Virus record (IMG/VR): IMGVR_UViG_3300020471_000004
Span: 1-64,000 of that record
Length of the DNA stretch: 64,000 nt
Reading direction: 5' to 3' (one strand)
In this document: positions 18,747 to 59,049 of the stretch, piece after piece
Layout: each line of letters opens with the position of its first letter
Numbering within the stretch: position 1 is the first letter of the stretch
The notes under the pieces: model-generated
Told to the model about the DNA's origin: nothing
What the model saw: the letters and a program-made list of their open reading frames with translations, nothing else
Database searches by the model: none
Position numbers and translations under genes: made by a program

Positions 18747-19826
18747 TTAGATACGCTTACCTTTAGCAACAGAGCGAACGTTACCTACCAAGAAGCTAAT
18801 GCTTTGGCTAATTAACCAACCTTTGTTAGTTTCGCCTTGGTTAGCACCGTCAGTAGGAGTAGAACGGATACCGCGAGTCGAGAACGCTGCGTGGTGTTCA
18901 GGATCAGATACAACGTAGATTTCACCTTTATCAAGAACGCGTTGGTTCTCAGGACGGAAACCGTCGGTCATAAGTTCCATACCGATTAGTGTACCGATTT
19001 TACCGTTCATTACTAGGTCGTACTTAGATACTGGATCTAAGAAAGCGCTGAACTCGCTGTTACCGATAATGTCTTTCCAGAAGTCATTAGAGATAATCGC
19101 TTTAGTAGCTGGTAAGTTCCAACCAGATACTTGTTCAGAAAGTGACGCAAGCATTTTAGGCGTAAGTTCACCAGAAATGTATGAAATGTCGTTAACGCGA
19201 CCAACAGTTGCATCAACAGCACGTTTCCAAATGCGGTCTTCTGCAACCATTACTGCTTCCATTGCCTGGTCGCGAATGTCACGTAGAAGGTCGCCAGATG
19301 ATTGGTCAAGCTCAAGTTGCGATACGCGTACCGCAGACTTAACTTCGTATTCAGCAGGTGTGAACTGACGGTCACGAATTAGCTGGTAACCCATCTGAGT
19401 TGGTGATGTTGATACAACAGCTTGAACTTCGTGGCGGAACATAGGGATACGCGGGTATTCACCTTGTTTAAGGTTGTTACCTACTGCTAGGTTACGCATG
19501 AAGCCTGCACGGTCTGCTTGCTCAACGATACGATCAGAAATCGCAGCACCAAGAGCAGCCCAGTCATCTAGGTTAGAGTTAGCTTGAGCGATCAAATCAC
19601 GGAATTCCTCAGAAGTCATTGCGTCTTCTTGAGGTGCTTCAACGATTTGTCCAGCAGAAGCCATTGACATTAACTTACCAATGTTTTGCATTAGTTCGTT
19701 ACGGTCGTGTGCGTTGATTTCACCGTTTGATGAAAGCGCCTTCATGCCGGAACCAGGTAAAATTAGGTTGTCTAGCGATTCGCCGTTTGCCATTACGTGG
19801 CGGAAGTTACGAGCAGAATGTTTCAT
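18747..19826 (-). CDS. major capsid protein (HK97-fold)
   Basis: 359 aa in scaffold-decoration-MCP order, GGAG SD. R.GFMR.L..L.QG, A.EA.MV.EDR and G.IGTL.G..L pattern typical of jumbo myovirus capsids. Confidence 0.75.
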   Translation of the reverse strand: MKHSARNFRHVMANGESLDNLILPGSGMKALSSNGEINAHDRNELMQNIGKLMSMASAGQIVEAPQEDAMTSEEFRDLIAQANSNLDDWAALGAAISDRIVEQADRAGFMRNLAVGNNLKQGEYPRIPMFRHEVQAVVSTSPTQMGYQLIRDRQFTPAEYEVKSAVRVSQLELDQSSGDLLRDIRDQAMEAVMVAEDRIWKRAVDATVGRVNDISYISGELTPKMLASLSEQVSGWNLPATKAIISNDFWKDIIGNSEFSAFLDPVSKYDLVMNGKIGTLIGMELMTDGFRPENQRVLDKGEIYVVSDPEHHAAFSTRGIRSTPTDGANQGETNKGWLISQSISFLVGNVRSVAKGKRI

Positions 19827-20619: not shown

Positions 20620-22599
20620 TTAGAAGGATTTCATTGCTCTAGAAAGTTTTGATTGGAAGTCAGAAGTTGAAACCGCAGTTGATTGCGACTCCAAAGTTTT
20701 TTCTTTTGGTACAACACGAGGTTGTAAACGTTGCTCTACAGAACTAACAGATTCCTGTCCGTCTTTACGAGCAAAAGAACTAGCAGCAACCATTTCGGCA
20801 ACTTCGTTTTGGAAGTCAGCGGACTTGCTGATAAGTTCCATCGTCTGGTCAACCAACAGCTTGTTGAATGCACCTGCGTTAGCTTCAAACACGTTATCAA
20901 TAAGCTCACGAGCATTATCAATACCTGCAGCCTTCAAGGTACTGGCCAAGCTTGAAATGATTGGGTTAGACTTTCCACGGAACACACCGTTATTCAGTCC
21001 CATGATAGAAGTAGCAAGGGCAGCACCCAGGCGTTCCATCAGTTTAGCATCGCGGTCTTTCTGGGCTTGTTCGTAGCCTGCAATTTTTGCATCCGCTTGT
21101 GCAACGATTTCTTTAGAGATAACCGTTTGCATTGTTTGTTCGTCAAAAGCAATTGACTCGAAACCGAACTGTTTAAGACCTGACTCTACGCCATCGTTAG
21201 CGATTGCTTTTAAGCAAGCTTGGCGGTAAGTAGGTTGATTAAAGATGCCACGTAGATTACCTTCGACATTTGACTCTGATGCAACTGCAACAGGAGTAGC
21301 GCCATGGAAAGCAACCCAACGGTTTTCACCAGCAACAACAGATACATTAGCTAGGCTAACTTGGTCTGCTTGTAAACCGCCTTCGGTAGAAGATGCAACC
21401 GCAGTCATAACGTCAAGAGAAGCAGAAACAGATACAGAGTCAGATTCAAGCTCTTCATCGTCATCGTCATCTTCTTCATCTTCTTCGTCATCTAGACCAT
21501 CAACGTCTTCGTCTTCGTCAGAGTCATCTTCGTCAGAGTCATCTTCGTCTTCGTCAGAGTCATCTTCGTCTTCGTCTTCGTCTTCGTCTTCGTCTTCGTC
21601 AGAAGAAGAGATAACTTCGAAATCATCGTCCAGGTCATCGAACTCGTCATCGTCCAGGTCCGAATCAATGTCGTCAAGGTCGTCAAGGTCGTCATCGTCA
21701 TCTAGATCCATATCCATGTCGTCATCCAACATAATATCATCTAGGTCATCGTCTTCATCCATAAGAAGATCATCGTCCATGTCCATAGAGGCATGTTCAA
21801 GTTCATCTAAAACTTCTGGATCGACAACGGCGGTAGAACAGCTAGGGCACACTGTAATGTCTTCGCTAGAAGAAAGAACGTGCATACCGCATTCTTCTGA
21901 ATCAGCACAAACAAAGTAATGCGCATCAGTTCCGAAACGGTCAGCAGCATCTTGCACTGCACTAGAGTTAGACTCTAATTCCTGCGCTGCAACTTCTTCA
22001 CCGTAGAAAGGACTGTAGTGAACAGAACCGCTAGAGTTAGAAATAAAGCTAACTTGGTTTTCGGTGTCTTCGTAAGCAGAAACAGGAGAATCGCCTGCTA
22101 GAATAGCCAGGTAGTCTTCTTTGGCTTCTTCAAAAGAAGAGGCAACGACAACGATACCTTGCTCGCCTTCAAGCTCTTGAACAAGAGCGCTTTCAGACTC
22201 TAGCTCGTCTTCTAAATCGCGGTCGAAATCTACATCGGTACTGCACGAAGGACAGTTAGATACAGACTCGCAAGCATCTGCGATAATGTGCGTGTTACAT
22301 TCAGAACACATGGTGTAATGAACTGACACTTGGTCTTCTTGGTCGGCACTGCTGGTAACTTCGAGATCAGTATCTAAAACCTTCATTGAGTCTCTGTTAC
22401 CAGACAGAGGATTCAAAAAAGATTTATGCGCACCAGCAACAGTAGCGATAGCAAAAGAACCGTCGGCAGAAGAAAGAACTTCTAGGGACTCTTGTTTAGC
22501 AACCATTGCGTAGTTACGGATAGCTTGTTCTCGGGTACCTGCAGTAACAACAATACCGCCAAAGCTAGGCTGAGTCGGTGATTTTTGTTTTACTGTCAT
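20620..22599 (-). CDS. putative prohead scaffold/core protein
   Basis: 659 aa, very acidic with a D/E tract of about 110 aa, two repeated Cys-containing modules, many S-x-S sites; first gene of the head operon with GAGGAG SD. Confidence 0.65.
   Translation of the reverse strand: MTVKQKSPTQPSFGGIVVTAGTREQAIRNYAMVAKQESLEVLSSADGSFAIATVAGAHKSFLNPLSGNRDSMKVLDTDLEVTSSADQEDQVSVHYTMCSECNTHIIADACESVSNCPSCSTDVDFDRDLEDELESESALVQELEGEQGIVVVASSFEEAKEDYLAILAGDSPVSAYEDTENQVSFISNSSGSVHYSPFYGEEVAAQELESNSSAVQDAADRFGTDAHYFVCADSEECGMHVLSSSEDITVCPSCSTAVVDPEVLDELEHASMDMDDDLLMDEDDDLDDIMLDDDMDMDLDDDDDLDDLDDIDSDLDDDEFDDLDDDFEVISSSDEDEDEDEDEDEDDSDEDEDDSDEDDSDEDEDVDGLDDEEDEEDDDDDEELESDSVSVSASLDVMTAVASSTEGGLQADQVSLANVSVVAGENRWVAFHGATPVAVASESNVEGNLRGIFNQPTYRQACLKAIANDGVESGLKQFGFESIAFDEQTMQTVISKEIVAQADAKIAGYEQAQKDRDAKLMERLGAALATSIMGLNNGVFRGKSNPIISSLASTLKAAGIDNARELIDNVFEANAGAFNKLLVDQTMELISKSADFQNEVAEMVAASSFARKDGQESVSSVEQRLQPRVVPKEKTLESQSTAVSTSDFQSKLSRAMKSF
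21563..21600. repeat. (tcttcg)x6 in-frame microsatellite encoding (ED)n
   Basis: Read directly; part of the larger D/E low-complexity tract at about 21450-21790. Confidence 0.85.
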
Positions 22600-22675: not shown

Positions 22676-22688
22676 TACTATAAAATTA
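22676..22688 (-). promoter_or_regulatory. candidate late promoter (TAATTTTATA)
   Basis: 13-nt tactataaaatta identical to 59020..59032; lies between a terminator and the head operon. Confidence 0.65.
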
Positions 22689-22805: not shown

Positions 22806-22834
22806 AAAAAAGCCCCGAATTAACGAGGCTTTTT
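22806..22834 (-). terminator. intrinsic terminator (possibly bidirectional)
   Basis: Minus strand aaaaa-gcctcg-ttaatt-cggggc-tttttt. Confidence 0.8.
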
Positions 22835-22907: not shown

Positions 22908-24278
22908 TTACTTTGCATCTAAGTCAAGCGAGTAGTAGTCTACTAGTTTGCCTTTAAGTTCTGCGGATACTCCTGATGAAGGCACATCATAGGAAACAAA
23001 CTTAACGCCTCTACCGTAAGCTTTGGTCACAGAAGCTTTCCACTCATTGTAGCTTTGACCTTTATTCTGGCTAGGGTTATCTAGGCGCGAGCTTTTGCCT
23101 GTATTCTTTGTGTCTGGACTACTGCTTTTTGTGCCTGAACGTTTTTTAGCCTGTTCGACTTTTATTTGGCGACTAGTAGGTGTTTTTTCTATAAGCTTTT
23201 CTGCTTTTCTAAGATCCCTTTGCAAAGGACGTATCTCGGCATTTAAGTCTCTAGCCTGTTGGGCTAATTCTTTTTTCTTTTCCTTGTTATCTGTGTTGTC
23301 CATGCGCTGCTTTATGCGCTCTACTTTTTGCTGCAACTTAACTATGTTCTTATACATTTTATAAGTATCAGGCGCTTTTACTGGAGCCTTAGGCTCCCTA
23401 GTTACTCGTGCTTTGCGTGTCTTAGAAGCAGTTTCATTAGGAGATTTCTTGCGTCCCTCAGGCACTTCTTCACCGTTCATAATACCTGCAATACGGCGTG
23501 CAGCTATACGAGGTCCTGCATAGTACTTGCGCATAGGTCCACCGCTAGCAGGCTGGTGGAATACATGCCAGCCAGGTGCAAGCATACCAGGTGAGCGTTT
23601 CTTGCGTCCCATTTTAGAACCTACGTTGCCTTTACCTCTAGCAGGAGCCGCCGATTCAGATTCAATACTTGATACTGAAATAAACGCTTCGTTGCCTCTA
23701 GAACCGTCACCGCGTGAGCTTCTACCGCGAGAATAGTCTACAAGGTCTTGAACAGCTAAAGGTATAGCACGTACATCTGAACATTCGCGGAAAGCAACGT
23801 GAACATTAGATTTAGTTAGTTCAAAAGAGTAGACACCGTCTTCAAAACCGTCATAGTTTATAGAGTAACCGCTAGGTAGCCGCGCTTGTTTAATAGCTTT
23901 ATAGGCGGCTTGGTTGCCAACGTTTGAATTTGAAGTGCTTTCTCTCTCAAAGTCTTCCTCAAAGCTTAGTGCCTCTGCTTCAAGGTCTGTAATAGACTCT
24001 GAGTAAGGACCGTCAGGGTCAATATCCCATAAACCGTCACTTGCTAGTGCCTCCATTTCCCGTTGTGCGAACAGGCGATTCTTCATGCTAGGGGTATACT
24101 TGGCTTCTTTAGATATGCGGAAAATACTAAATAGACCTGTACGGCTTTTTAATACGTAACGTCCTGGTTGAGCAAAAACTACTCGTGCTTTAGGCTTTAC
24201 TGTAGCAAGAGCCTTTTCAATAGTAGCAGGAATAGGGTGCTTAGAACGTGCGCTTTCTGAAAGTATTTGAATATACAT
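22908..24278 (-). CDS. basic multi-segment protein, tagged putative head cargo
   Basis: MYIQILSESA; internal ERESTS and IESESA sites; Lys/Arg-rich coiled coil. Confidence 0.7.
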   Translation of the reverse strand: MYIQILSESARSKHPIPATIEKALATVKPKARVVFAQPGRYVLKSRTGLFSIFRISKEAKYTPSMKNRLFAQREMEALASDGLWDIDPDGPYSESITDLEAEALSFEEDFERESTSNSNVGNQAAYKAIKQARLPSGYSINYDGFEDGVYSFELTKSNVHVAFRECSDVRAIPLAVQDLVDYSRGRSSRGDGSRGNEAFISVSSIESESAAPARGKGNVGSKMGRKKRSPGMLAPGWHVFHQPASGGPMRKYYAGPRIAARRIAGIMNGEEVPEGRKKSPNETASKTRKARVTREPKAPVKAPDTYKMYKNIVKLQQKVERIKQRMDNTDNKEKKKELAQQARDLNAEIRPLQRDLRKAEKLIEKTPTSRQIKVEQAKKRSGTKSSSPDTKNTGKSSRLDNPSQNKGQSYNEWKASVTKAYGRGVKFVSYDVPSSGVSAELKGKLVDYYSLDLDAK

Positions 24279-24293
24279 AGTTAATCCTTTGGT

Positions 24294-25271
24294 CTATTTA
24301 CTACGCTTAGTGCTTTTAGTGCTTTTAGTGCTTTTAGTACTACGGGTGCTTTTAGTACTACGCTCTTTGCGGGTTTTAGACTTAGGGCTTAAAGCATCAA
24401 TCTGTTTTTGGACTTTTTCTTGTAAAGCTTCCCACGCATCAACTGCCTTATCCATTTCTGCTTCAACCTTGTCATACTCTTTATTGAGTTTGTCCAGCTT
24501 TTGTTGAATTTCTTTTTTCTTAGAGCCTTCAGCGTCTCTGAGTTCGTACTCAAGATCATCAATATCATCGGCTAGGTCAATGCTTTTGTCTTCAAGCTCG
24601 GCGACCTTTTCAAACTCCTTGCTTGACTCAACACTTTGGCGCAATTCGTCTATTTGTTTTCTAGCTTTTTCTTTTTCTTCTTTTTCTTTGTACTTTTGAG
24701 GATTGTTGGCTTTATCGGCTTTCTCAAGTTCCTTGTGTTCAGCTTCAAGCTTCTTATATTTCTTTTCGAGCTTCTTCTTGGTCTTTTTAGCAGCAACTCT
24801 TTCTTCGTCTACTTCTTTTTTGTAATACTCGATTTCTTTTTTAGCGTCAGCCACTTCTCCCTTGGCGTATTCTATTTCACTTTCGTCTCCGTCCTCTTCG
24901 GCCTCTTCAAGCTCTTCTTGGGCATCTTCAAGACGTTCTTGGGCATCTTCTAACCTACGTTGGTTTTTAGTATCACCTTCTAGGGCATCTTCGGCTTCAT
25001 CTAACTCGAAACCAAGGTTTTCCATTTTAAGAGCCACAGAATCCAAGCGCTTTTCAATTGATTTAGCAGACTTATCTTTTGTAGTAGAAGCATTGTCCTT
25101 TTGAGCTTGCTTCTTGGTAGTGTTGTCACGTTCTGCCTTTGGTTTAGCTAAACGTTTGGCATGGCTGCTGTTCGGGTACTTTTTTAGGTATTTCTTTTTC
25201 TCAGAAGAACCTAATTTTGCAAACTGCTCAGCAGACAAGCCTGCACTTTCTGAATTAAGAGTAATAATCAT
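24294..25271 (-). CDS. K/E-rich coiled-coil protein, tagged putative head cargo
   Basis: MIITLNSESA; KKYLKKYPNSSHAK motif; (STK)n tail. Confidence 0.7.
   Translation of the reverse strand: MIITLNSESAGLSAEQFAKLGSSEKKKYLKKYPNSSHAKRLAKPKAERDNTTKKQAQKDNASTTKDKSAKSIEKRLDSVALKMENLGFELDEAEDALEGDTKNQRRLEDAQERLEDAQEELEEAEEDGDESEIEYAKGEVADAKKEIEYYKKEVDEERVAAKKTKKKLEKKYKKLEAEHKELEKADKANNPQKYKEKEEKEKARKQIDELRQSVESSKEFEKVAELEDKSIDLADDIDDLEYELRDAEGSKKKEIQQKLDKLNKEYDKVEAEMDKAVDAWEALQEKVQKQIDALSPKSKTRKERSTKSTRSTKSTKSTKSTKRSK
24307..24360. repeat. 9-nt tandem repeat (ttagtgctt-like, about 6 units) encoding an (ST[K/R])n tail
   Basis: Read directly. Confidence 0.8.
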
Positions 25272-25279
25272 GTTTTTTC

Positions 25280-25753
25280 CTAGATTGTTTCATACAAGCG
25301 TTTAAGACCAGCCATCTTTCCTGGGTAACCTTTACGCTGTAACAAATTAAAAAAGTCTACAGGCTTCATGTTGTGCAAGGGATTACTATCTCTAGCAGTA
25401 CCGCGCGGGTGAATATAGTCTTTGACAAATTCATCAAACTCTATTTCGTACTCTACCATACTGTCAACAAACTCCAAGAACTGTTCCCAAAGTTTATCTT
25501 CGTCAGGAGTATTCAGATCCACAAGTTCAAAGGATTTGACCTCGGCAATAGGTAACGCTCGGGGGTATGCCAGTATACCGTGCCTATAGTTTCGAGAGTC
25601 ACGAATACCTGCAAAGCGTTTATCTTTTGCAGCTTTTTCTGCATCGATAAACTCTACAGGCTGGGGGTTTGTAGGCTGTGCCCCTATAGAATAAGGTCTG
25701 AATTTCAGTCCGTAATAGAACTTTTGGTTACTTAATGAAATTAGAAGTTTCAT
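25280..25753 (-). CDS. DarA C-terminal-like domain protein, tagged putative head cargo
   Basis: YYGLKFRPYSIGAQP...RHGILAYPRALPIAEVKSFELV matches my recollection of the DarA_C (defence against restriction A) consensus; starts MKLLISLSN. Confidence 0.65.
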   Translation of the reverse strand: MKLLISLSNQKFYYGLKFRPYSIGAQPTNPQPVEFIDAEKAAKDKRFAGIRDSRNYRHGILAYPRALPIAEVKSFELVDLNTPDEDKLWEQFLEFVDSMVEYEIEFDEFVKDYIHPRGTARDSNPLHNMKPVDFFNLLQRKGYPGKMAGLKRLYETI

Positions 25754-25760
25754 AGATACC

Positions 25761-27434
25761 TCAAATAAGCTTTTCTATGTTAGCTGGCATTCTTAAACCT
25801 AGGCGTTCATAGAAGTCTGCCAAAATAGCAGGGTCAATATAGTTAGCAATAGCAGTAGATATAGTAAGCTTACCGTTATTAAAATGGCCAAGCTCTTTGG
25901 CTACTTTTTGTAAAGCACCTTTTAACCAAGTCTCTGCGTCTTTGTTAGTTACCTGGCGTTTACGAGTAAATAAAGGACACTTTTCAATAATATCTCTTGC
26001 TAGACGTGTACCTTTAAGAGTACGGAATTTGTGAGCAGTAACCCCTTCAGGTAACATAGACTTCAAATATTTGTTTACAGCATTGGCTGTTATACGTCTG
26101 TTACCGAAAGTAAATAGAGGGTCTTTGCGCTTCTTGCCTTCGCTAAGTTGGTCAAGCAGTTCTATAATCAATTTGTTTGTGACAGAATTAGGTTTAAGCA
26201 CATGCTTTTGGACCTGTGCTTTCTTGGCTTCGTACTTTATTTCTCGGTTCTGACCTTTCTTGTAATAGTGACCTGATTGCAGTACAGTCAAACCGTATGT
26301 GGTCTTATCACCTGTCTTGCCTTCACGGGTACCTATACGCGCACTGGTTTGGTACATAACTTCTATAACAAGACACAGCAAGCCTTCTTTGGTTGATATG
26401 CCTTCTGATTTTAGTTTCTGCAACCAACGTCTTCTTACACCAGGCGCTACTTTTTCAAATTCTTCTACAATCTTAAACTTTTTGCTACGTTGCTTAGAGT
26501 TCCACCTTTCGGTGTATACCTTTAGATAGTTTTCAGCAGCAGGGGCCTTATATTCTAAAACATAGGCGTTATCTTTTTTAGGATCGTAGTTAGGATTCAT
26601 GCGAACATCGCCTGCTATACCTTTATTGCTTAACAACAAACCTTTTGAGGTATAGTAAGAAAGAGTATCGTCAATGTAACCAACAAACTGTTCAGGTAGA
26701 TTGTGATGGCGTATGCCTGCATCTTTGATAGCATCAATTACTTCACGGATGTCCAGATACGGCTTACCTGATTGGCGTACATAGTTTACAACAAAGTTTT
26801 TCCATGCTTTATTTACTTCTAGGCTAGCTTTTCGGAATTCAACATAGACAGGATTGTCTTTGTGTTTCTTGCGGAGTTCTTGACTTAGGTGGATAGTGCC
26901 GTCACCACCTAACTTGGTGCTAAGTTTAGAAACCTTTTTAAGTAAACTATCTTGGTCACTTACTTCTAGTTCAAACAGACTTGAAAGAGCTACATCGTTT
27001 AAGTCACTTACTTTGGTCTTTAGAACGTTAATCGCATTCTGCCTAGAAGTTTCTTTAGGAGACGTAGCAATTGTGTAGAACTTTTTGATTATGTCTAGTC
27101 CTGACCTAGATATAAGAGTTTCGTTCTCTATTTTAGCACGTACCTTTTTGTCTCTTACCTGCTTGGCTACTTCATACGCAGAACCTAGAAAGTCTTCGTC
27201 CTCTTCGTGTAAGGTATACCCTTTTAAGAAAAGGCTTGTCATTTCATCGTAAGCTTTTAGGTTAAACTTGTAGTGGGCCATAAACTCACGCCCTTGCTTA
27301 ACCCACTCACGGATGTCGCCAGCTAGGTTATGAGGGAATTTGTATTCAGGACTATCTGAATATGCGACAAGCAGCACCACTTTTGTAAATGCCGTTGCTA
27401 TGTCAGAATTAATTTTTGATAAAGATACTAACAT
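25761..27434 (-). CDS. type IB DNA topoisomerase with long N-terminal extension
   Basis: Catalytic pentad R (SARIG), K (YEAKK), R (AHKFRT), H (ELGH), Y (ANYIDP). Start MLVSLSK at 27434 inferred from the TAATG overlap with the upstream stop. Confidence 0.88.
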   Translation of the reverse strand: MLVSLSKINSDIATAFTKVVLLVAYSDSPEYKFPHNLAGDIREWVKQGREFMAHYKFNLKAYDEMTSLFLKGYTLHEEDEDFLGSAYEVAKQVRDKKVRAKIENETLISRSGLDIIKKFYTIATSPKETSRQNAINVLKTKVSDLNDVALSSLFELEVSDQDSLLKKVSKLSTKLGGDGTIHLSQELRKKHKDNPVYVEFRKASLEVNKAWKNFVVNYVRQSGKPYLDIREVIDAIKDAGIRHHNLPEQFVGYIDDTLSYYTSKGLLLSNKGIAGDVRMNPNYDPKKDNAYVLEYKAPAAENYLKVYTERWNSKQRSKKFKIVEEFEKVAPGVRRRWLQKLKSEGISTKEGLLCLVIEVMYQTSARIGTREGKTGDKTTYGLTVLQSGHYYKKGQNREIKYEAKKAQVQKHVLKPNSVTNKLIIELLDQLSEGKKRKDPLFTFGNRRITANAVNKYLKSMLPEGVTAHKFRTLKGTRLARDIIEKCPLFTRKRQVTNKDAETWLKGALQKVAKELGHFNNGKLTISTAIANYIDPAILADFYERLGLRMPANIEKLI

Positions 27435-27874
27435 TATTCTACCATATGGGCCGGAGCTTGCTTTAACCAAGCTATTGCTTCGTCTTGGCTATCAAAAGAT
27501 TTAAAATTGATACCTGACTCGTTAAATACACGCTCTATTTGGATTCTTGAATTCTTAGACATTTGAGGATCGAAAATAACAGCAACAAAACAAGGATAAT
27601 CACGAGTGCTATTTAACCATTTACGAAAGCGAACGAATTCTTTAAATTTTGTTTCGGCATCTGTACTGGACACAGTGCCTTTATCCGCGTATATGCAGTA
27701 CTTCCAATTTGTATCTCTGCTTTGCGATATAACCTTATTTATTCCATCGATTATACCACAAGCATTATCTATTCCAATAGTTCTTAGAAGTACAAGGGTA
27801 ACTATGCTAGATAGTTCCCTGTAACACACAGCGTAAGTCCCTTTAGGGCAGCTTATTGCTGCATCGTCTTGCAT
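27434..27874 (-). CDS. STAS/SpoIIAA-like protein
   Basis: Alpha/beta pattern with VAVIF and C-terminal FDSQDEAIAWL. Confidence 0.55.
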   Translation of the reverse strand: MQDDAAISCPKGTYAVCYRELSSIVTLVLLRTIGIDNACGIIDGINKVISQSRDTNWKYCIYADKGTVSSTDAETKFKEFVRFRKWLNSTRDYPCFVAVIFDPQMSKNSRIQIERVFNESGINFKSFDSQDEAIAWLKQAPAHMVE

Positions 27875-27880
27875 AGTGCC

Positions 27881-28819
27881 TCACATTGATTTGTAGCTAC
27901 CTGAATACTGACCGTCAACTAGGTATTGGTTAACAAAATATTTTTCAGCTATTTCCCAACCTACAGGGGTAGTAAATCCTCTAACAGATTGACCGTGAAC
28001 CATAGCTTCTACCAGTATAGCAAAAGCTTCATCCCACCAAGGGTTAGCATACCCAGGGTGGTTGAATTGGTCTTTGTGTAGGCGCTTGGCAGCTACTTGC
28101 TTCTTGAACTTTATTACATCGCTATTCTTCAACACATTCTTTATAGCATAGTGCGCAAGTTCGTGAGTTAGAACCTGTGCAATACCGTCTACAGAAAGGC
28201 TTCCGAATATACGAGTTAACTGACCTGGGTTCAGTATAATATAAATATCATACGTACCTCGAGTACGGTTCATGCTGTGAGCAATACAGCTACCTATCTC
28301 GTTAGAAATGCCTAAGCTGATTGGGTACTTGAACTTTATTTTAGTACCTAATCGACCTAGAGCAATTTCTATGTTTCGTCTAATGCTACCGCTTGCAGGC
28401 AATACAGTACCTACGAATATAGAAGTAGGTTTCTGTATAAACTGAAAGTTAACTTTAGCTGAGCCTGCAATAGTAGGTGCTACCTTTTTAGGTGACGGAG
28501 CAGTCACCTTAGGTTTAGGTTTTATATCAGATGCAGATTTAAAAGTTTCATCAAAAGATGAACTCCCTGCCAGCACGTCTTTACCTTGTATTTTGCCTAA
28601 ATAAGGCTTAGACGTGGTTACCAGCTCTCTTGCTTTCTGCTCACTAATAGGAACTAAAGCAGCTACTTGGTTATCAACCAAAATAAACTGGTCTTTGTTC
28701 TTGACCAGACCGTATACGGCCCTGCCTTCTAAATTAATTCGAGTAGTAGCACCGTCAACACTGATAGGGTTGCCTAAATACCTATACCAACGCCCAGCAT
28801 GAAGTACATCAATTTTCAT
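27881..28819 (-). CDS. zincin-like metallopeptidase with N-terminal shared beta domain
   Basis: VLTHELAHY (HExxH) plus downstream DEAFA third-ligand motif. Confidence 0.7.
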   Translation of the reverse strand: MKIDVLHAGRWYRYLGNPISVDGATTRINLEGRAVYGLVKNKDQFILVDNQVAALVPISEQKARELVTTSKPYLGKIQGKDVLAGSSSFDETFKSASDIKPKPKVTAPSPKKVAPTIAGSAKVNFQFIQKPTSIFVGTVLPASGSIRRNIEIALGRLGTKIKFKYPISLGISNEIGSCIAHSMNRTRGTYDIYIILNPGQLTRIFGSLSVDGIAQVLTHELAHYAIKNVLKNSDVIKFKKQVAAKRLHKDQFNHPGYANPWWDEAFAILVEAMVHGQSVRGFTTPVGWEIAEKYFVNQYLVDGQYSGSYKSM

Positions 28820-28834
28820 GGCTTTTCCTTAATC

Positions 28835-30763
28835 TTACGACCAGATACTTACGATACCTGACTGTCTAAAACCTTCTTTGTCAACAACTACTCGGAACTC
28901 TGCTGAACGAGAGATAGGCGAGTAGTAACCAAGTATTTCGCCACTTCCGCCTAAGCCAGTTACAGTTACAGACCCTTCTTCCTCAGCATCGATCCAGTCA
29001 GGCAGATTGTCTTCTTCTTTCAAGGTAGAAGGTAACGAATCAATAAGTTTTTTGATCTTGGCGTAACCTAGACCTTTAACACTGGAGCCTGCACCTTCTT
29101 CTGCTTCATTCATTATCTTTCTACCTAAGGTAGGAGTAATTACAGAGTCCAGCAGTTTAAAAGTATTTTTCGGCAATACATTAGTATAACCTCTTGCTAG
29201 AGAGACCCCTGACTTTAAGCTTATTGAATCAACCTTTAAGCTCTCTACAAAAGCAGTTGCTTTTTTGATTCCAGCAGGAGTAAAGTTAAACTTGTTACCA
29301 GCAACGTAAATGCCTTTTAACCCTTTAGCAGCACCTGGTTTAGGCAAAATTACGTAAGGGCTATCTCCGTCGATATTTACTTTCCAAGTATAGCGCTCTA
29401 CCTCTCTGCTATTGTAATAAGATACATTACCTGTGCCGAAAACAGTAGAAAGAAGTTTTATGGTATCTTCCTCAGAAGTGCTACCTCTTTGCTTAGAGGT
29501 AGCCAGAGGCTTTTTTGGAGAGTTTATTATTCCCTCTTCTCTTAAAGTAACTAGTAGTTTTTTAACAGAGTTTACTAGGCCTTTATCAAACACTCTTATT
29601 AAAGAAGGGCTAGAGTCATTTAATAAAAGAGCCGCTACTACCTGAGCGTACGGGTCATAGTTTTCTAGATCGAACAGTATGCTCTTGGCCCGTTTTTGAG
29701 TAAGGCCGGTGTCAGTCATTAGTTTTGTAAGACCTTTTTCTACAGAAGTACGACTACCGTTAGTAAGCATAGCTCTTAAGGGCTTAACGTCAGCAGGGCT
29801 TGCATCGTTGCCTCGAGAATCAGTAAGACTAACAGTATCATCACCATCCAGGTATTCGTAAACGTCACTTATTTTAGAATTTGTTTTGTCTGCTATAACA
29901 ATAGCTCTTAAGGTTTCTTTGACTGACTCTTGGTTAAAAGTAAGTCCCTTACCGATAGAAGCCTCTAATACCTTCTGGTACTTGGGACTTAGTTTCTTTG
30001 CTACTAGACCCGCGACAGCCCCTACCTTTACAGGCGCAGAACCAGGCTTTTGTGTTCGCATATTAGGAGTAATAGTAGCACCAGAAAGCTTTTGTAAAGC
30101 AGCGTTAGGCTTGATACTTTTGATGTTTGACATGATTGCAGAGAAGGTTTTGGCACTAGCCAGCTTTTTGACATTGGCAACCATCTTCTTACCGGCAGCA
30201 GAAGCAGCGTACTTTTCTAACGCTGCGGTATCTTTGGTTTTTAGAGCACCGATTAGGTAATCGATACCCTTGGTGTTTAATTGTTTTTCTTTAGAGTAGT
30301 CTTCTAGCTTAGACAAGATAGAAACACCTTTTGATCCGAAAAGGATCTTGGCATTTTCTTGTTGCTTTTTAGAAGCCGATTCAGACTCTAGTCCGTCTTC
30401 AAGGCTTGCAGAAGCAGAAGCTTTTACTTCCATCATAAACTTAGAACCTGGCCCTCCGACCGGTTTAACTCCACCTACTTTTAAACCTGCATCTTTCAAA
30501 GCTGCCTTAAAAGAACGTGAATAGTTTTTCTCGTTCTGGAAGTCGGCACTCATAGTTTTAGGATGGAAAGCAGATCGAACAACTGCGCCTTTTTCACCAG
30601 GCGATACACTAAACATAGCAGTAGGTATGCCTGCATCTTTCAAAGCAGCACGTACTTGTTTACCAATACGGCCTGCTTCGGCTTTTGTGATAGTATTGGA
30701 AGCTTTTTTAACCGAGCCGGAAAGAGCCGGCATGTCTTGGGTGTTAGAAACATCAATCTTCAT
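28835..30763 (-). CDS. large Lys/Ala/Ser-rich protein, putative head cargo
   Basis: MKIDVS..ALSGS; internal KASASASLEDGLESESAS. Confidence 0.7.
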   Translation of the reverse strand: MKIDVSNTQDMPALSGSVKKASNTITKAEAGRIGKQVRAALKDAGIPTAMFSVSPGEKGAVVRSAFHPKTMSADFQNEKNYSRSFKAALKDAGLKVGGVKPVGGPGSKFMMEVKASASASLEDGLESESASKKQQENAKILFGSKGVSILSKLEDYSKEKQLNTKGIDYLIGALKTKDTAALEKYAASAAGKKMVANVKKLASAKTFSAIMSNIKSIKPNAALQKLSGATITPNMRTQKPGSAPVKVGAVAGLVAKKLSPKYQKVLEASIGKGLTFNQESVKETLRAIVIADKTNSKISDVYEYLDGDDTVSLTDSRGNDASPADVKPLRAMLTNGSRTSVEKGLTKLMTDTGLTQKRAKSILFDLENYDPYAQVVAALLLNDSSPSLIRVFDKGLVNSVKKLLVTLREEGIINSPKKPLATSKQRGSTSEEDTIKLLSTVFGTGNVSYYNSREVERYTWKVNIDGDSPYVILPKPGAAKGLKGIYVAGNKFNFTPAGIKKATAFVESLKVDSISLKSGVSLARGYTNVLPKNTFKLLDSVITPTLGRKIMNEAEEGAGSSVKGLGYAKIKKLIDSLPSTLKEEDNLPDWIDAEEEGSVTVTGLGGSGEILGYYSPISRSAEFRVVVDKEGFRQSGIVSIWS

Positions 30764-30800: not shown

Positions 30801-30829
30801 AGTATAGCAGAATTTTGCTATTATTTATA
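30801..30829 (-). promoter_or_regulatory. candidate promoter region (TATAAATA; palindrome; extended -10 TGcTATACT)
   Basis: Only sizeable gap in the cargo block; minus strand TATAAATA-atagcaaaattcTGcTATACT. Confidence 0.4.
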
Positions 30830-30862
30830 GACCGACTTTTGTACCTTAATGTTAAAGATAGG

Positions 30863-31411
30863 TTAACTCTTGTTTCGCGCTACCTTTAGTAAGGCTTTGG
30901 CAGATTGCTCCAACATTTTCAGTCGGTCAGCCTGTGTCAAGCCTAGGTGTTTGTTTTTAGAAAAACTAGCCTGCCAAGAAGCTAGAAAACTATTTGTAAG
31001 GTCTTCTTGGGCTTCTGATAGACGAAGTTTTTTATCTTGCTCAGCTTTGGCAGATTCTATGCCTGCTTTAAAGAAAGCAAGTATTGAATTCTTTCCTCTG
31101 GAAGATAGATAAGTATCTATGATTTCAAATAAATACTCGAAATCTTCACCCATCTCAAAGTAACGGTCTAATACAGTTTCGTTACGGTCAAGGTATTCTG
31201 AAATTTTAGGTACAGCAGTACGTAACTGGCGCATATTTGTAATGCGTAGCGTAGAGATAATTTCCTGTAGTCCTAATAAGAAGTTGCTTTCGTAAGCAGG
31301 AGTAAACCGTTTACCGCTATACATCATCAAGCTCATTATATTACACAGCTTGGCAACTTTAGGCTTTTCGAACAAGGAACTTATTGAACGCTTAGTTAAA
31401 TCAATTTTCAT
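30863..31411 (-). CDS. hypothetical helical protein, putative head cargo
   Basis: MKIDLTKRSISS; GAGG SD. Confidence 0.65.
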   Translation of the reverse strand: MKIDLTKRSISSLFEKPKVAKLCNIMSLMMYSGKRFTPAYESNFLLGLQEIISTLRITNMRQLRTAVPKISEYLDRNETVLDRYFEMGEDFEYLFEIIDTYLSSRGKNSILAFFKAGIESAKAEQDKKLRLSEAQEDLTNSFLASWQASFSKNKHLGLTQADRLKMLEQSAKALLKVARNKS

Positions 31412-31413
31412 AG

Positions 31414-32217
31414 TTACCTCATTACTGCCATGACTTGGTTATGGTTACTATGGTTTGAAACATAGGCAGGATCTTCTACAGCGCTGTTTTCAAAACCAGT
31501 TATTTGGTGCACATACCTGAAAGCGATCTGGTTTGCATCGTTTACATAAGTAGGCTTTTGTAGAACAGTATGACTACATACATTACGTAAATTATCTTTA
31601 TATACCGTATGTCCACAAATGCTACAGGTGTAAGCTTGATACCACATACCAATACTGAATGTATTTAGGTCCTCTGTTAGAATGCGGTTAGCAAGAACAG
31701 GGTCTTTGGTTCGGTCAAAAGCAAGTAACTGAATAATACGAGCATGGTTGCCACGGAACTGAGGTAACGACTTCATGTATACGTCAAGAATAACACCTTT
31801 AGCTTTGGTAATATCCTTGTTGTCATGCTCTTGGTGAGTAGGTTTTCCTTTCCACGTTTTGTATGCCAGCATACCTAAATCAGGACGAAAGCGTAGTGCC
31901 TCTTGAGTAGACAAACAATCACCGTTGGTGTTAGGTACGTCAGTTATAACACTAGGCACAGGCACCATCACGTAGTCACGAAGATTAGGGCTTATCTGAT
32001 AATGTTCAGATGCCATTGGTAACCAAGTGTTTGCATCTATTACCATGCTTTCTGAGGCGCCTGTTGCACTAGGCTTAAAAGTGATTTCGTTTGATTTACC
32101 AATGTCTTTTAACTCGATAGCTTTGTGGCGTACGTCACGTTTGGTAACATCGAAACTAGAGCTTTCAAAGCTGTTCTGTTCATTGGGAATAATAATGTCT
32201 TTTAAATCAAGTTTCAT
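31414..32217 (-). CDS. prohead maturation protease (HK97/assemblin superfamily) with Zn-ribbon insert
   Basis: NTNGD, GKPTHQEH (His), KGVILD, FSIGM (Ser), CSICG..CSH, FENSAVEDPA. Confidence 0.75.
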   Translation of the reverse strand: MKLDLKDIIIPNEQNSFESSSFDVTKRDVRHKAIELKDIGKSNEITFKPSATGASESMVIDANTWLPMASEHYQISPNLRDYVMVPVPSVITDVPNTNGDCLSTQEALRFRPDLGMLAYKTWKGKPTHQEHDNKDITKAKGVILDVYMKSLPQFRGNHARIIQLLAFDRTKDPVLANRILTEDLNTFSIGMWYQAYTCSICGHTVYKDNLRNVCSHTVLQKPTYVNDANQIAFRYVHQITGFENSAVEDPAYVSNHSNHNQVMAVMR

Positions 32218-32219
32218 AA

Positions 32220-33461
32220 TTAACCTACTCGGGTTACTTCTATAACTAACTGGTTATTAGCGTTACGACCTGCGTTAACGTTAATATCTTGAGTAGAAAC
32301 TCTGCCACCGCGCGAAGCACCTTTGTTTACGAAAGTGAAAGAACCTACTTCACCTTTCTCGAAATCAGGAGTTGGTTTTGACGTAAGAGAAGACAGACTG
32401 TTTGTACTAATAGCTTTGGCTACTTTCTTAGCTATAGCTGCACTAGTATTGTATTCAACAGAGAATGAAGTATTGCCTATACTATAAGAAGAAGGCAATC
32501 TTTTTGAATTGGTTATCTTTAGGTATAGCTGACCTTTGCCTTTTGAAAATCTGCCTGCACTTTGGCCTTTTCTGCTAGGTCTAGGCTTACGAGTAGTAGG
32601 ATCTCTGGTAATAGTTTCTTTACGAGCAGGCACATCGTAATCACCTAGTTCTACGTCACCGCTAGTTTGGGCATTACGTATAAGGTCTAGTGAGAAACGA
32701 GTAGGTTGCTTAGGTTCAAAAATTGAAGTGATAGCAAGAGGAGTCTGTTTGCCTGACTTGAGCATACTAGCAGCCTGTTTAGGTGTAACTCGGATCATGC
32801 GACCATCACCAAACGTGCCACCACGGCTCTTGAATGCAGTACCTTGCTTCCAGCCGTCTGTAGAAAAGGCAGGAGATGCAAAATCAATACCGTATTTAGA
32901 TTTGATAGAACTAACAAAGCCAAGTTTTTTGCTTTCAAGCAACGACACTAGGTCTTTTATCAAATCATTCAGGTTGAAAGGATAGCGCTGACCAGGTTTA
33001 AGCGTCTTCAAGAATTCTTCGGTTGCTGCCAAGTTAGAAAGAATTTGGACATTCTTTTTGGTCATGCTGGTACGAGTGTTTGCACCGAACAAGGCAATAG
33101 CCGCCAACTTAGCCAGATCCGCAGAGTTGTCTTGGGCAACCTTCTTGGGGCTAGGTTTGCGTGTAGGCTTTTTAGTACCAGTAGCTGCATCTTCCGATAA
33201 GATTTTATGGTCACGTTTAAGTTGGTTAAACTTGTTTCGCGTTATCTTGAACTTCCAGTACTTGTTTAGCTCCTCGTCAAAGTCAAACAGGAATATACCT
33301 TTAGGTGAATTAGAAAGGTAGAAAATATCGCCACGTCTTAGAGCCAGTTCGTGAGTAGCATCTTCTATTTCAATTTTCTTTTTAGCTTTCATCTGAATAG
33401 ACCCTTTAATAGGCGCTTTAACTTTAGTTGCAGATGAACTTTCTAGTAGATTTATTTTCAT
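32220..33461 (-). CDS. basic protein, tagged putative head cargo
   Basis: MKINLLESSSA; Lys-rich. Confidence 0.7.
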   Translation of the reverse strand: MKINLLESSSATKVKAPIKGSIQMKAKKKIEIEDATHELALRRGDIFYLSNSPKGIFLFDFDEELNKYWKFKITRNKFNQLKRDHKILSEDAATGTKKPTRKPSPKKVAQDNSADLAKLAAIALFGANTRTSMTKKNVQILSNLAATEEFLKTLKPGQRYPFNLNDLIKDLVSLLESKKLGFVSSIKSKYGIDFASPAFSTDGWKQGTAFKSRGGTFGDGRMIRVTPKQAASMLKSGKQTPLAITSIFEPKQPTRFSLDLIRNAQTSGDVELGDYDVPARKETITRDPTTRKPRPSRKGQSAGRFSKGKGQLYLKITNSKRLPSSYSIGNTSFSVEYNTSAAIAKKVAKAISTNSLSSLTSKPTPDFEKGEVGSFTFVNKGASRGGRVSTQDINVNAGRNANNQLVIEVTRVG

Positions 33462-58967: not shown

Positions 58968-59049
58968 TAACTCCCTAAAGGAATAAGGCTTTTTATATAA
59001 AAGACCGTGTAAACAGCTTTACTATAAAATTATTAAACTTAGGGAGTTA
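58968..59049 (-). promoter_or_regulatory. candidate late promoter (59020..59032) nested inside an 11-bp anti-SD/SD inverted repeat
   Basis: taactccctaa (58968..58978) and ttagggagtta (59039..59049) are perfect complements; the first is the sheath-2 SD. Confidence 0.7.

What the first reader, a model, noticed from the sequence alone, without database searches (positions are those of the whole stretch)
25761..27434. Type IB topoisomerase with the head tag, inside the late block
Seen: intact R-K-R-H-Y pentad, an N-terminal extension of roughly 300 aa, start MLVSLSK, location among tagged genes between protease and scaffold. Established: TopIB needs no ATP and is virion-packaged in poxviruses; T4-like phages use type II enzymes. 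Inference: a packaged relaxase acting during packaging, ejection or first transcription.
Basis: partly seen in the sequence, partly recalled or inferred. Interest (0 to 1): 0.72.

Follow-up and report, generated by a model that had tools for sequence, protein, structure and literature searches.

The report
Tagged topoisomerase IB in phage head operon
A marine jumbo phage encodes an intact ATP-independent DNA-relaxing enzyme (type IB topoisomerase) of an already known phage family. It carries a short N-terminal leader shared with about twenty other phage proteins, which suggests, but does not prove, that it is loaded into the capsid and delivered with the DNA.

Summary
The gene is real: window 25761-27434 (-), 557 aa, starting MLVSLSK. 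It is a type IB topoisomerase: Pfam PF01028 E=1e-19, pentad R366-K404-R471-H517-Y532 conserved in 74 homologues, AF2 pLDDT 95.7, VIA-align Z 20-22 to human, bacterial, archaeal and variola TopIB. The canonical enzyme spans about residues 208-557. The true extension is about 210 aa, a helical domain with no structural match, not 300 aa.

The family is already known (PHROG 23460; phiRSL1 ORF108, PaBG gp84, Lu11, NCTB; Iyer 2021).

The N-terminal "tag" is real:
- 10 of 261 ORFs match it, against about 0.3 expected.
- It is kept at protein level, not DNA level.
- It is kept on orthologues of TopIB, DarA_C, NUDIX and KMPT-N proteins in distant phages.
- It is disordered in the model.

The gene sits in a tight 8-kb operon of tagged, highly charged proteins, between the prohead protease and the scaffold-like/capsid operon.

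Packaging into the head is plausible but unproven. No proteomics covers it, and the leader lacks a nearby protease site. The operon's own promoter belongs to a sigma70-like class otherwise found in the replication region, not the late-looking class.

The parts
25761..27434 (-). Type IB topoisomerase gene, 557 aa plus stop (P0002); 63.6 kDa, pI 9.6
   Evidence: ORF and translation; Pfam PF01028 71.3 bits against a cut-off of 23.7; PHROG 23460 full length, E=7e-107; physical properties
27408..27434 (-). N-terminal leader ('tag'), residues 1-9 MLVSLSKIN; core M-L-V-S-L-S
   Evidence: Coil with low pLDDT in both AF2 models. L5 and S6 are kept in at least 90% of 10 orthologues. The motif is enriched at N-termini genome-wide.
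26769..27407 (-). Family-specific all-helical N-terminal domain, residues 10-222
   Evidence: AF2 pLDDT 95. No significant structural match: best VIA Z 6.2, AFDB clusters E>0.4.
26499..26768 (-). Canonical small beta-rich N-terminal (cap) domain of TopIB, residues 223-312, with the conserved MNPxY motif (N280 invariant)
   Evidence: Strands in the model. Human Top1 aligns from model residue 208 and variola TopIB from 274. Conservation.
25764..26498 (-). Catalytic domain, residues 313-557. R366 (26337-26339), K404 (26223-26225), R471 (26022-26024), H517 (25884-25886), Y532 (25839-25841)
   Evidence: Pfam match 313-530; profile alignment to 6z01 and 2f4q; invariance; codon coordinates checked
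30801..30845 (-). Promoter-like site heading the operon: GGTACAAAAG, 26 nt, then extended -10 TGCTATACT
   Evidence: Sequence. Same architecture and spacing as about 10 sites at 126-161 kb of the genome. Coordinates.
22908..30763 (-). Tightly packed operon (gaps of 15 nt or less): 28835-30763 (MKIDVS), 27881-28819 (MKIDVL; KMPT-N-like N-terminus plus HExxH), 27434-27874, TopIB, 25280-25753 (MKLLISLS; DarA_C), 24294-25271 (MIITLNSES; K/E-rich), 22908-24278 (MYIQILSES; basic)
   Evidence: ORF coordinates; N-termini; Pfam DarA_C; HExxH and charge; KMPT-N-like similarity
22806..22830 (-). Intrinsic terminator ending the operon (7-bp GC-rich stem, 6-nt loop, U-run)
   Evidence: Sequence. Folding gives -16.4 kcal/mol, z=-4.5. 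The same hairpin is conserved at the same place in phage NCTB.
22676..22688 (-). Late-looking promoter 13-mer TAATTTTATAGTA, heading the next operon (acidic 659-aa protein, 236-aa virion protein, major capsid protein)
   Evidence: Exact 13-mer occurs three times in 232 kb, always intergenic: before 20620, the tail sheath gene 57317, and 88848. A near-identical element sits at the same place in NCTB.
31414..32217 (-). Prohead maturation protease (itself starting MKLDLK)
   Evidence: phrog_18299 E=1.5e-92; 76% identical to the NCTB orthologue and homologous to PaBG gp226
18747..19826 (-). Major capsid protein
   Evidence: phrog_2522 E=1.8e-93

Best explanation
The gene encodes a catalytically competent type IB topoisomerase of the jumbo-phage-specific family (phiRSL1 ORF108, PaBG gp84, Lu11, NCTB).

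Shown:
- It has the complete TopIB clamp, a small beta domain plus a tyrosine-recombinase-like catalytic domain, with the R-K-R-H-Y pentad.
- This is preceded by a family-specific helical domain of about 210 aa, and by a flexible 6-9-residue leader (M-hydrophobic-hydrophobic-S-hydrophobic-S).
- About 10 proteins of this phage carry that leader strictly, and about 25 loosely.
- The leader is conserved at protein level on orthologues of several families (TopIB, DarA_C-like, NUDIX, KMPT-N/metallopeptidase) in phages only 35-47% identical.
- The gene is translationally coupled inside an 8-kb operon of leader-bearing, highly charged proteins. The operon lies between the prohead protease and the scaffold-like/capsid operon, and is bounded by its own promoter-like site and a strong terminator.

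Inferred:
- The leader acts like a capsid-targeting sequence that brings these proteins into the prohead core.
- The topoisomerase therefore travels in the head and enters the cell with the 232-kb DNA.
- There it relaxes positive and negative supercoils without ATP or Mg, through a 3'-phosphotyrosyl intermediate at Y532. This would act during ejection and the first host-RNA-polymerase transcription, before the phage's own type II enzyme is made.

Sub-confidences: TopIB identity and catalytic competence about 0.95; leader is a real functional element about 0.85; leader means head packaging of this enzyme about 0.45.
For: Identity:
- Pfam PF01028 E=1e-19 and PHROG 23460.
- A profile of orthologues hits PDB TopIBs 6z01 (3e-19), 2f4q (3e-14) and 2b9s, with catalytic residues in register.
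- The pentad is invariant or nearly so in 74-75 homologues.
- AF2 pLDDT 95.7. Foldseek and VIA-align give Z 22.4 to human Top1, 21.6 to D. radiodurans, 20.8 to Caldiarchaeum and 20.4 to variola.

Leader:
- The strict class-A pattern matches 10 of 261 N-termini. Expectation is 0.23 from internal-Met contexts and a mean of 0.43 (maximum 2) in 500 shuffles. The looser pattern found 12 N-terminal matches out of 21 in the whole proteome.
- Ser and Leu codons differ between copies, so conservation is at protein level.
- It is kept on TopIB orthologues, DarA_C-like orthologues, NCTB orthologues of five tagged genes, and on KMPT-N/SprT-like, NUDIX, DarA_C and TopIB genes of a distant contig.
- It is disordered in the models.

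Context:
- Operon structure, promoter-like site and terminator.
- Protease and capsid flanks.
- Synteny in NCTB and adjacency to the capsid block in PaBG, next to virion protein gp83.
- DarA_C and KMPT-N domains in tagged proteins. These are modules of virion-delivered proteins according to PMC5512222.
- Metagenomic homologues are fused to Tad6 or SprT-like domains.
- An x-x-E-S motif resembling a prohead-protease site follows the leader in 9 of 25 tagged proteins, against 6 of 236 others.
Against: - No direct evidence of virion presence. The genome is an uncultivated marine viral contig.
- PaBG's virion list of 14 Coomassie bands does not include gp84. This is weak, because only major bands were identified.
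- The TopIB leader is not followed by a nearby (L/I)-x-E site; the first is at residues 41-43, inside a well-packed helix. This differs from T4 capsid-targeting sequences.
- The operon's promoter-like site belongs to the class found before a topoisomerase II subunit and small genes at 126-161 kb, not the 13-mer before the capsid and sheath operons. Expression may therefore be early or middle as well as, or instead of, late.
- In phiRSL1 and Lu11 the gene lies among nucleotide-metabolism genes, and the leader is absent (phiRSL1) or degenerate (Lu11).
- Several leader-bearing genes lie outside the head region.
- The leader patterns were defined after looking at the data.
Confidence: 0.5

Rival explanations
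1. It is an ordinary intracellular replication, transcription or recombination topoisomerase that is never packaged. It relaxes supercoils ahead of forks and RNA polymerase on the large genome, alongside the phage type II enzyme. Its place in the head region is a matter of genome organisation. The leader serves some other common purpose, or only reflects shared ancestry of N-termini.
For: - Iyer 2021 treats the family as part of the recombination/topology apparatus.
- In phiRSL1 and Lu11, and upstream in PaBG, the neighbours are thymidylate kinase, NUDIX, MmcB-like and NAD-metabolism genes.
- The promoter class is shared with a topoisomerase II subunit.
- PaBG gp84 is not among the identified virion bands.
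Against: - The leader is appended to unrelated enzyme families and conserved across phages. It is statistically non-random.
- Operon partners are charged, fast-evolving, tagged proteins next to the protease.
- DarA_C and KMPT-N modules point to delivered proteins.
Confidence: 0.33
2. The leader is not a targeting signal. It is a recognition element for a protease or chaperone, for example a substrate or pseudo-substrate strand for the prohead protease or an unfoldase. It would control maturation or lifetime of a set of potentially toxic DNA- and nucleotide-acting enzymes. TopIB would then be held inactive or short-lived rather than packaged.
For: - Leaders differ by one residue between a cleavable-looking form (LISES, ILSES, LLESS) and a non-cleavable-looking form (LISLS, LVSLS).
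- The protease itself starts with a related leader.
- TopIB cleavage complexes are toxic, and metalloprotease genes of the SprT kind are linked or fused to TopIB.
Against: There is no evidence of cleavage. In T4 the same kind of N-terminal element does both jobs, targeting and cleavage, so this rival is not cleanly separable from packaging. The complex prediction gave no answer.
Confidence: 0.1
3. The enzyme is primarily a counter-defence or DNA-protection effector rather than a housekeeping relaxase. It would act together with anti-restriction, anti-Thoeris and DNA-protein-crosslink protease modules early in infection.
For: - Homologues are fused to Tad6 (a Thoeris inhibitor) and to an SprT-like protease.
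- A DarA_C protein is adjacent here and in NCTB.
- A KMPT-N/Tad6 gene lies near TopIB in contig L025.
Against: The full catalytic pentad and clamp are conserved as in relaxing enzymes. Fusions are a small minority of 948 relatives. No known defence is countered by a TopIB activity.
Confidence: 0.07
4. It is not a topoisomerase but a site-specific tyrosine recombinase or protelomerase.
For: The catalytic fold is shared. Recombinases score Z 8-14 and protelomerases Z 6.7-7.4. One longer homologue also gives a weak Phage_integrase Pfam hit.
Against: TopIBs score Z 20-22 over both domains. Pfam assigns Topoisom_I only. The Tyr motif TAIANYIDP matches the eukaryal/archaeal TopIB motif.
Confidence: 0.02

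Closest known systems
Jumbo-phage TopIB family: phiRSL1 ORF108 'topoisomerase IB', PaBG gp84, Lu11 gp197, phage NCTB BN7874_227 (PHROG 23460)
   Same: Colinear over the full length, including the helical N-domain. Identity is 47% to NCTB, 32% to PaBG, 31% to Lu11 and 27% to phiRSL1. The family was already noted as a phage-specific topoisomerase I (PMC7824862). NCTB shares the whole operon layout.
   Different: Gene context differs. In phiRSL1 and Lu11 the gene sits among metabolic genes. The leader is absent in phiRSL1 and degenerate in Lu11. None of these proteins has been assayed or shown in virions, as far as the held literature shows.
Poxvirus TopIB (vaccinia/variola, PDB 2h7f, 3igc, 1a41)
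   Same: Same two-domain clamp and R-K-R-H-Y chemistry. VIA Z 20.4 over model residues 274-548; Foldseek TM by target 0.67.
   Different: The pox enzyme is about 314 aa, with no helical N-domain and no leader. Sequence identity is only 13-14%. Packaging of the phage enzyme is unproven.
Archaeal/eukaryal TopIB (Caldiarchaeum 6z01; human Top1 1k4s) and bacterial TopIB (D. radiodurans 2f4q/3m4a)
   Same: These are the best sequence-profile and structural matches. The active-site Tyr motif NYIDP is as in eukaryal and archaeal enzymes. H517 is at the pentad's fourth position, as in pox and eukaryal enzymes.
   Different: There is no linker coiled-coil and no eukaryal core subdomains I and II as such. 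The phage N-domain has no counterpart.
T4 capsid-targeting-sequence proteins (IPI-III, Alt) and P1 Dar internal head proteins
   Same: A short N-terminal leader is shared by several non-structural proteins encoded near or away from head genes. Many leaders are followed by an (L/I/S)-x-E-like site. A DarA_C-domain protein is the immediate neighbour.
   Different: There is no sequence similarity to the T4 leader. The TopIB leader has no adjacent cleavage site. Function in targeting is untested here.

Membership tests
Type IB topoisomerase (Pfam PF01028) | Significant match to the catalytic-core profile above the curated threshold | tested here: met
   71.3 bits against a cut-off of 23.7, residues 313-530
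Type IB topoisomerase (Pfam PF01028) | Catalytic pentad Arg-Lys-Arg-His(Asn)-Tyr in register | tested here: met
   R366, K404, R471, H517 and Y532. They align to the active-site columns of 6z01 and 2f4q and are invariant or at least 90% conserved in 74-75 homologues.
Type IB topoisomerase (Pfam PF01028) | Two-domain C-clamp fold (small N-terminal beta domain plus tyrosine-recombinase-like catalytic domain) | tested here: met
   AF2 pLDDT 95.7. Z 20-22 to human, bacterial, archaeal and variola TopIB covering model residues 208/274-557.
Type IB topoisomerase (Pfam PF01028) | ATP- and Mg-independent relaxation through a 3'-phosphotyrosyl intermediate | not testable with these tools
   Needs a plasmid relaxation assay with wild-type and Y532F protein
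Jumbo-phage TopIB family (PHROG 23460) | Full-length colinear similarity, including the N-terminal helical domain | tested here: met
   PHROG match 7-557 of 557. tblastn covers 97-100% in NCTB, PaBG, Lu11 and phiRSL1. 232 cluster representatives at E<1e-30, mostly about 550 aa.
T4-type capsid-targeting-sequence (CTS) proteins | Short N-terminal leader shared by several proteins of the phage | tested here: met
   10 of 261 (class A) and 8 of 261 (class B) N-termini, against 0.2-0.4 expected; conserved in orthologues
T4-type capsid-targeting-sequence (CTS) proteins | Leader ends at a prohead-protease site, (L/I)-x-E | tested here: not met
   For TopIB the first (L/I)-x-E is at residues 41-43, inside a packed helix. 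Nine other tagged proteins do have x-x-E-S within 20 residues.
T4-type capsid-targeting-sequence (CTS) proteins | Leader necessary and sufficient for encapsidation; protein present in virions | not testable with these tools
   The phage is uncultivated. The complex prediction gave no answer.
Virion-packaged TopIB (poxvirus type) | Late expression with the morphogenetic genes | tested here: inconclusive
   The gene is co-operonic with tagged head-region genes. However, the operon's promoter-like site is of the class seen at 126-161 kb, including before a topoisomerase II subunit, and not the TAATTTTATAGTA class before capsid and sheath genes. Metatranscriptome contigs did not cover the gene.
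Virion-packaged TopIB (poxvirus type) | Protein detected in purified virions | not testable with these tools
   The only related data set is PaBG, with 14 Coomassie bands. It lists neighbour gp83 but not gp84.
Polyvalent / early-phase delivered effectors (Iyer 2017) | Domain fusion or tight linkage with DarA, MPTase/SprT-like and other conflict domains in a packaging context | tested here: inconclusive
   This protein is a single enzyme. Its neighbours have DarA_C and a KMPT-N-like domain plus HExxH. Homologues are fused to Tad6 or SprT-like. A distant contig links KMPT-N/SprT-like, NUDIX, DarA_C and TopIB.
Tyrosine recombinase / protelomerase | Best profile and fold matches to integrase, Xer or Tel enzymes | tested here: not met
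   No Phage_integrase Pfam hit for this protein. Recombinases score Z 14 or less and protelomerases 7.4 or less, against 20-22 for TopIBs.

The most novel reading that the evidence does not exclude
The short N-terminal leader (M-x(0-3)-hydrophobic-hydrophobic-S/T-hydrophobic-S, and perhaps the related MK-I/L-D/N-L form) is the address label of a cargo-loading system in NCTB/PaBG-like marine and soil jumbo phages. It would place a whole set of enzymes inside the capsid for co-injection: TopIB, NUDIX hydrolase, a DarA_C protein, KMPT-N/metallopeptidase proteins and highly charged proteins. This would make the gene the first phage example of a virion-delivered type IB topoisomerase, paralleling poxviruses.
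Probability: 0.4. Interest if true: 0.72.

Novelty: new member of a known kind. Interest (0 to 1): 0.45.

Why it matters
The enzyme itself is a further member of a phage TopIB family that has been annotated since phiRSL1 and noted in comparative work. On its own it is ordinary.

What could matter is the leader. It is a 6-residue N-terminal motif conserved across unrelated enzyme families and across phages, and it marks a defined set of proteins. If it is a capsid-targeting label, three things follow:
- It would reveal which activities these host-RNA-polymerase-dependent jumbo phages bring with their DNA: relaxase, NUDIX and anti-restriction modules.
- It would give the first phage counterpart of the poxvirus packaged TopIB.
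- It would offer a simple tag for loading foreign proteins into large capsids.

The idea can be tested directly in the cultivable relative PaBG.

Tried and rejected
- Megablast of the region against phage records gave no match. Only protein-level relatives exist.
- Single-sequence phmmer against PDB gave no hit. A profile of orthologues was needed.
- The T4-type late promoter TATAAATA occurs once in the operon's upstream gap. It is not enriched in intergenic DNA (2 of 23 copies), so it was rejected as a late-promoter signal.
- The generic sigma70 and terminator scan gave fewer promoter hits than shuffles and missed the real terminator. The terminator was confirmed by folding.
- Fold searches of the isolated N-terminal domain found nothing above the background for helical proteins: PDB VIA-wide best Z 6.2, AFDB clusters E>0.4.
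- The protein-atlas feature search gave only a sub-threshold lead to Topoisom_I_N (0.78).
- A complex prediction of the leader peptide (1-16) with protease, the 236-aa virion protein and the capsid protein returned 'no answer' (score 0.16). It is not evidence either way.
- Metatranscriptome contigs covered only 24950-25459, not the TopIB gene, and may contain DNA. They say nothing about timing.
- The Lu11 genome paper could not be read. The Lu11 record carries no mass-spectrometry notes. The PhiXhv paper has no virion proteomics.
Full report
**Observation.** On the minus strand an ORF runs from 27434 to 25761. The longest frame begins at a TTG at 27470. The ATG at 27434 overlaps the stop codon of the upstream ORF (TAATG) and gives the 557-aa protein starting MLVSLSK. 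All genes of the window lie on the same strand. The genome behind the window is a single viral contig of 232,692 bp. It is estimated at 93% complete, comes from IMG/VR, and is present in marine and coral-reef metagenomes. It is therefore an uncultivated marine jumbo phage.

**Identity.**
- Pfam assigns the catalytic core of type IB topoisomerase (PF01028) to residues 313-530, at 71.3 bits against a cut-off of 23.7.
- PHROG 23460, which has no function name, matches the whole length.
- tblastn against phage records finds full-length relatives in phage NCTB (47.5%), PaBG gp84 (32%), Lu11 (31%), the Xanthomonas PhiXhv phages and phiRSL1 ORF108 (27%, annotated topoisomerase IB). Shorter relatives occur in Motura, BCSR5, HRDY3 and Rhizobium phages.
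- An exhaustive search finds 948 cluster representatives, 232 of them below 1e-30, mostly about 550 aa.
- A profile of ten orthologues hits the solved TopIBs of Caldiarchaeum (6z01, 3e-19), D. radiodurans (2f4q, 3e-14) and Leishmania. The active-site columns are in register, and the Tyr motif TAIANYIDP matches the eukaryal/archaeal NYIDP.
- In 74-75 homologues R366, R471, H517 and Y532 are invariant, and K404 is kept in at least 90%.
- The AlphaFold model is very confident (pLDDT 95.7). It superposes on human Top1 (Z 22.4, model residues 208-557), D. radiodurans TopIB (21.6), Caldiarchaeum (20.8) and variola TopIB (20.4, residues 274-548). Tyrosine recombinases and protelomerases score far lower.

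The pentad claim is confirmed, and the protein is a TopIB rather than a recombinase.

**The N-terminal extension.** The canonical enzyme, small beta domain plus catalytic domain, begins at about residue 208-225. The true extension is a helical domain of residues 10-222, not 300 aa. Folded alone it is again confident (pLDDT 95.3). It has no structural relative above the helical background (best Z 6.2; AFDB clusters E>0.4). A language-model search gave only a sub-threshold lead to the eukaryal Topo I DNA-binding fragment. Its function is open. It is basic (pI 9.1) and more variable than the catalytic domain in a reef strain.

**The tag: statistics.**
- Residues 1-9 are coil with low confidence in both models.
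- N-termini of the M-L-I-S-L-S kind occur on many ORFs. A strict pattern matches 10 of 261 ORFs. Expectation is 0.23 from internal-Met contexts and a mean of 0.43 (maximum 2) in 500 shuffles of each N-terminus.
- A looser pattern found 21 matches in the whole proteome, 12 of them within the first ten residues.
- A second form, MK-(I/L/V)-(D/N/Q)-(L/I/V), matches 8 ORFs against 0.2-0.4 expected. These cluster around the protease and include the protease itself.
- Copies use different Ser (TCN/AGY) and Leu codons, so the conservation is in the protein and not in a DNA or RNA element.
- The patterns were chosen after inspection, which inflates the statistics.

**The tag: independent conservation.**
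- L5 and S6 are kept in at least 90% of ten TopIB orthologues, down to 32% identity. Many of the 150 best family representatives begin the same way.
- In NCTB five orthologues of tagged genes keep a leader: MLITLSR, MLISISL, MKIISISA, MKIVSISA and MKVFLSESK.
- All four homologues of the DarA_C-like neighbour keep it, while the linker behind it varies.
- On a distant contig (L027) the KMPT-N/SprT-like, NUDIX, DarA_C and TopIB genes, plus three unknown genes, all start with it.
- The NUDIX orthologues align only from residue 21, so the leader is an appended module.

In this genome the tagged set includes a DarA_C protein (25280-25753), two KMPT-N proteins (13917-14603 and 40585-42285), a NUDIX hydrolase (genome 126292-126759) and a DUF5754 protein. 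It also includes 27881-28819, which has a KMPT-N-like N-terminus and an HExxH motif. DarA, metallopeptidase and related modules are characteristic of proteins packaged into heads and delivered with the DNA (PMC5512222).

**Context and transcription.** From 30763 to 22908, seven genes follow each other with gaps of 15 nt or less. TopIB is fourth, and its start overlaps the preceding stop.
- Upstream lies a 99-nt gap with GGTACAAAAG, 26 nt, then an extended -10 TGCTATACT.
- Downstream lies a strong intrinsic terminator (-16.4 kcal/mol, z=-4.5).
- After the terminator comes the 13-mer TAATTTTATAGTA, followed by the acidic 659-aa protein (pI 4.05), the 236-aa virion protein (a PaBG gp81 homologue) and the major capsid protein.
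- That 13-mer occurs exactly three times in the genome, always intergenic: before this capsid operon, the tail sheath gene, and gene 88848. It is a good late-promoter candidate.
- The site before the TopIB operon belongs to another class, with about ten further members. All of those lie at 126-161 kb on the other strand, before small unknown genes and a topoisomerase II subunit.
- phiRSL1, a relative, has no RNA polymerase genes and is blocked by rifampicin (PMC5468394). Host-type promoters are therefore expected.

The timing of the operon is thus open. 'Late block' is not shown, and read-through from the protease genes upstream is possible because no terminator is seen in the gap. Early plus late synthesis would not exclude packaging. 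From memory, T4 internal proteins are made in both phases.

**Comparative context.**
- NCTB keeps the arrangement from protease through tagged genes, TopIB and the DarA_C protein to the terminator, the promoter and the capsid operon. The terminator hairpin and the promoter element are both conserved there. Tagged proteins are 40-59% identical between the two phages, against 72-76% for capsid, protease and sheath. The tagged proteins therefore evolve faster.
- In PaBG, gp84 lies five genes upstream of the capsid gene and next to gp83, an abundant virion protein that starts MLIKINLLEA. Upstream of gp84 are thymidylate kinase, MmcB-like and SprT-like genes. The PaBG virion list of 14 Coomassie bands includes gp83, gp81 and gp80 but not gp84 (PMC7412058).
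- In phiRSL1 and Lu11 the gene lies among metabolic genes, and the leader is absent or degenerate.
- Among longer family members, one is fused to Tad6, one to an SprT-like protease and one to DUF5661.

**Interpretation.** Three points are firm. The enzyme is an intact TopIB of a known phage family. The leader is a real, selected, appended element shared by a defined set of proteins. The gene is part of an operon of such proteins beside the prohead protease.

The step from there to 'packaged in the head' is inference by analogy with T4 capsid-targeting sequences and the P1 Dar proteins. It is supported by the domain content of the tagged set. In addition, nine of 25 tagged proteins have a protease-like x-x-E-S site right after the leader, against six of 236 others. 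It is weakened by four things: the TopIB leader has no such site, the promoter class is not the late-looking one, contexts vary in relatives, and proteomic evidence is absent. I put head packaging of this enzyme at about 0.45.

If it is packaged, the mechanism would be ATP-independent relaxation of the incoming 232-kb DNA during ejection and first transcription, before the phage type II enzyme is made. The main rival is an ordinary intracellular relaxase (0.33).

**Novelty.** TopIB in this phage group is already annotated and was discussed by Iyer and colleagues (PMC7824862). The gene is therefore a new member of a known kind. I found no description of the leader in the held literature, but the searches were limited. 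The leader, not the enzyme, is what deserves follow-up.

Noticed in passing
window 13917-14603, 22908-24278, 24294-25271, 25280-25753, 33458-34828, 40585-42285, 50807-51241; genome 110694-111239, 113105-113509, 125559-126314, 126292-126759, 228112-228597, 229271-229933, 229967-230317, 231974-232351: A genome-wide set of ORFs starts with the same leader (LISLS, LISES, ISLS and similar). Several lie far from the head genes, including a NUDIX hydrolase and a DUF5754 protein.
   Followed up: partly
window 14607-14936, 27881-28819, 28835-30763, 30863-31411, 31414-32217, 32220-33461, 39947-40582; genome 105587-105814: A second N-terminal form, MK-(I/L/V)-(D/N/Q)-(L/V), clusters around the prohead protease and is carried by the protease itself. 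Whether it is the same signal as the LISLS form is unknown.
   Followed up: partly
window 24294-25271 (aa 15-35), 33458-34828 (aa 12-35); genome 125559-126314 (aa 17-36); PaBG 179714-181105: Directly behind the leader, three proteins here and one in PaBG share a further motif of the form F-x-K-x(5-8)-KKYL-x-x-(H/Y/F)-P-x-S. This suggests a small conserved module.
   Followed up: no
window 27881-28819: This gene lies two genes upstream of TopIB. It has a KMPT-N-like N-terminus and an HExxH motif at aa 219, but no Pfam hit. SprT-like proteases are linked to TopIB (PaBG gp89, contig L027) or fused to it (P0086). In eukaryotes, SPRTN removes Top1-DNA adducts.
   Followed up: partly
genome 126772, 128704, 129882, 133464, 141570, 147771, 148999, 149484, 160984 (+ strand); window 30845 (-): A promoter-like class: GGTACAAAAC, 25-26 nt, then TGCTATAAT. 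At several sites it is followed by a conserved leader, ATGTTGTGAAGAAGCACAGCA, that could form a hairpin.
   Followed up: partly
many intergenic sites, e.g. window 4040, 39945; genome 66283, 71073, 75434, 103847, 108078, 113513, 123687, 155245, 177483, 215192: A second promoter-like motif, AAAACTGTAAA(C/T)A, lies 35-40 nt before start codons of many genes. It may be a phage-specific middle-promoter class.
   Followed up: no
window 22676-22688, 59020-59032; genome 89654 (-): The exact 13-mer TAATTTTATAGTA lies before the capsid operon, the tail sheath gene and gene 88848-89531. One-mismatch copies lie before 205630-208047. It is conserved in NCTB.
   Followed up: partly
window 40585-42285, 24294-25271, 20620-22599: These proteins have extreme charge. 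40585-42285 has a D/E-rich stretch of about 200 aa (pI 4.5). 24294-25271 is K/E-rich with a C-terminal STK repeat. 20620-22599 is acidic (pI 4.05, a PaBG gp82 homologue, PHROG label 'ATPase') and may be the scaffold.
   Followed up: no
window 28831-29463: In a coral-reef metagenome strain, this part of the 642-aa tagged protein is replaced by 508 unrelated bases. The N-terminal domain of TopIB (27135-27366) carries many substitutions, while the leader codons are unchanged.
   Followed up: no
L023 10193-10975 (phage NCTB BN7874_230): The NCTB orthologue of the prohead protease, 76% identical, is annotated 'Phage endolysin' in the public record. This is probably a misannotation. Several NCTB gene starts in this block also look mis-set: unannotated homologues of 27881-28819 and 27434-27874 lie in 'gaps'.
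   Followed up: partly
genome 161065-162672: The phage also encodes a topoisomerase II subunit (phrog_551). TopIB is therefore additional to a type II enzyme, not a substitute for it.
   Followed up: partly
window 21245-21919 (+), 24636-24953 (+), 29886-30260 (+): Long antisense ORFs lie inside genes of the block. They are most likely spurious.
   Followed up: no
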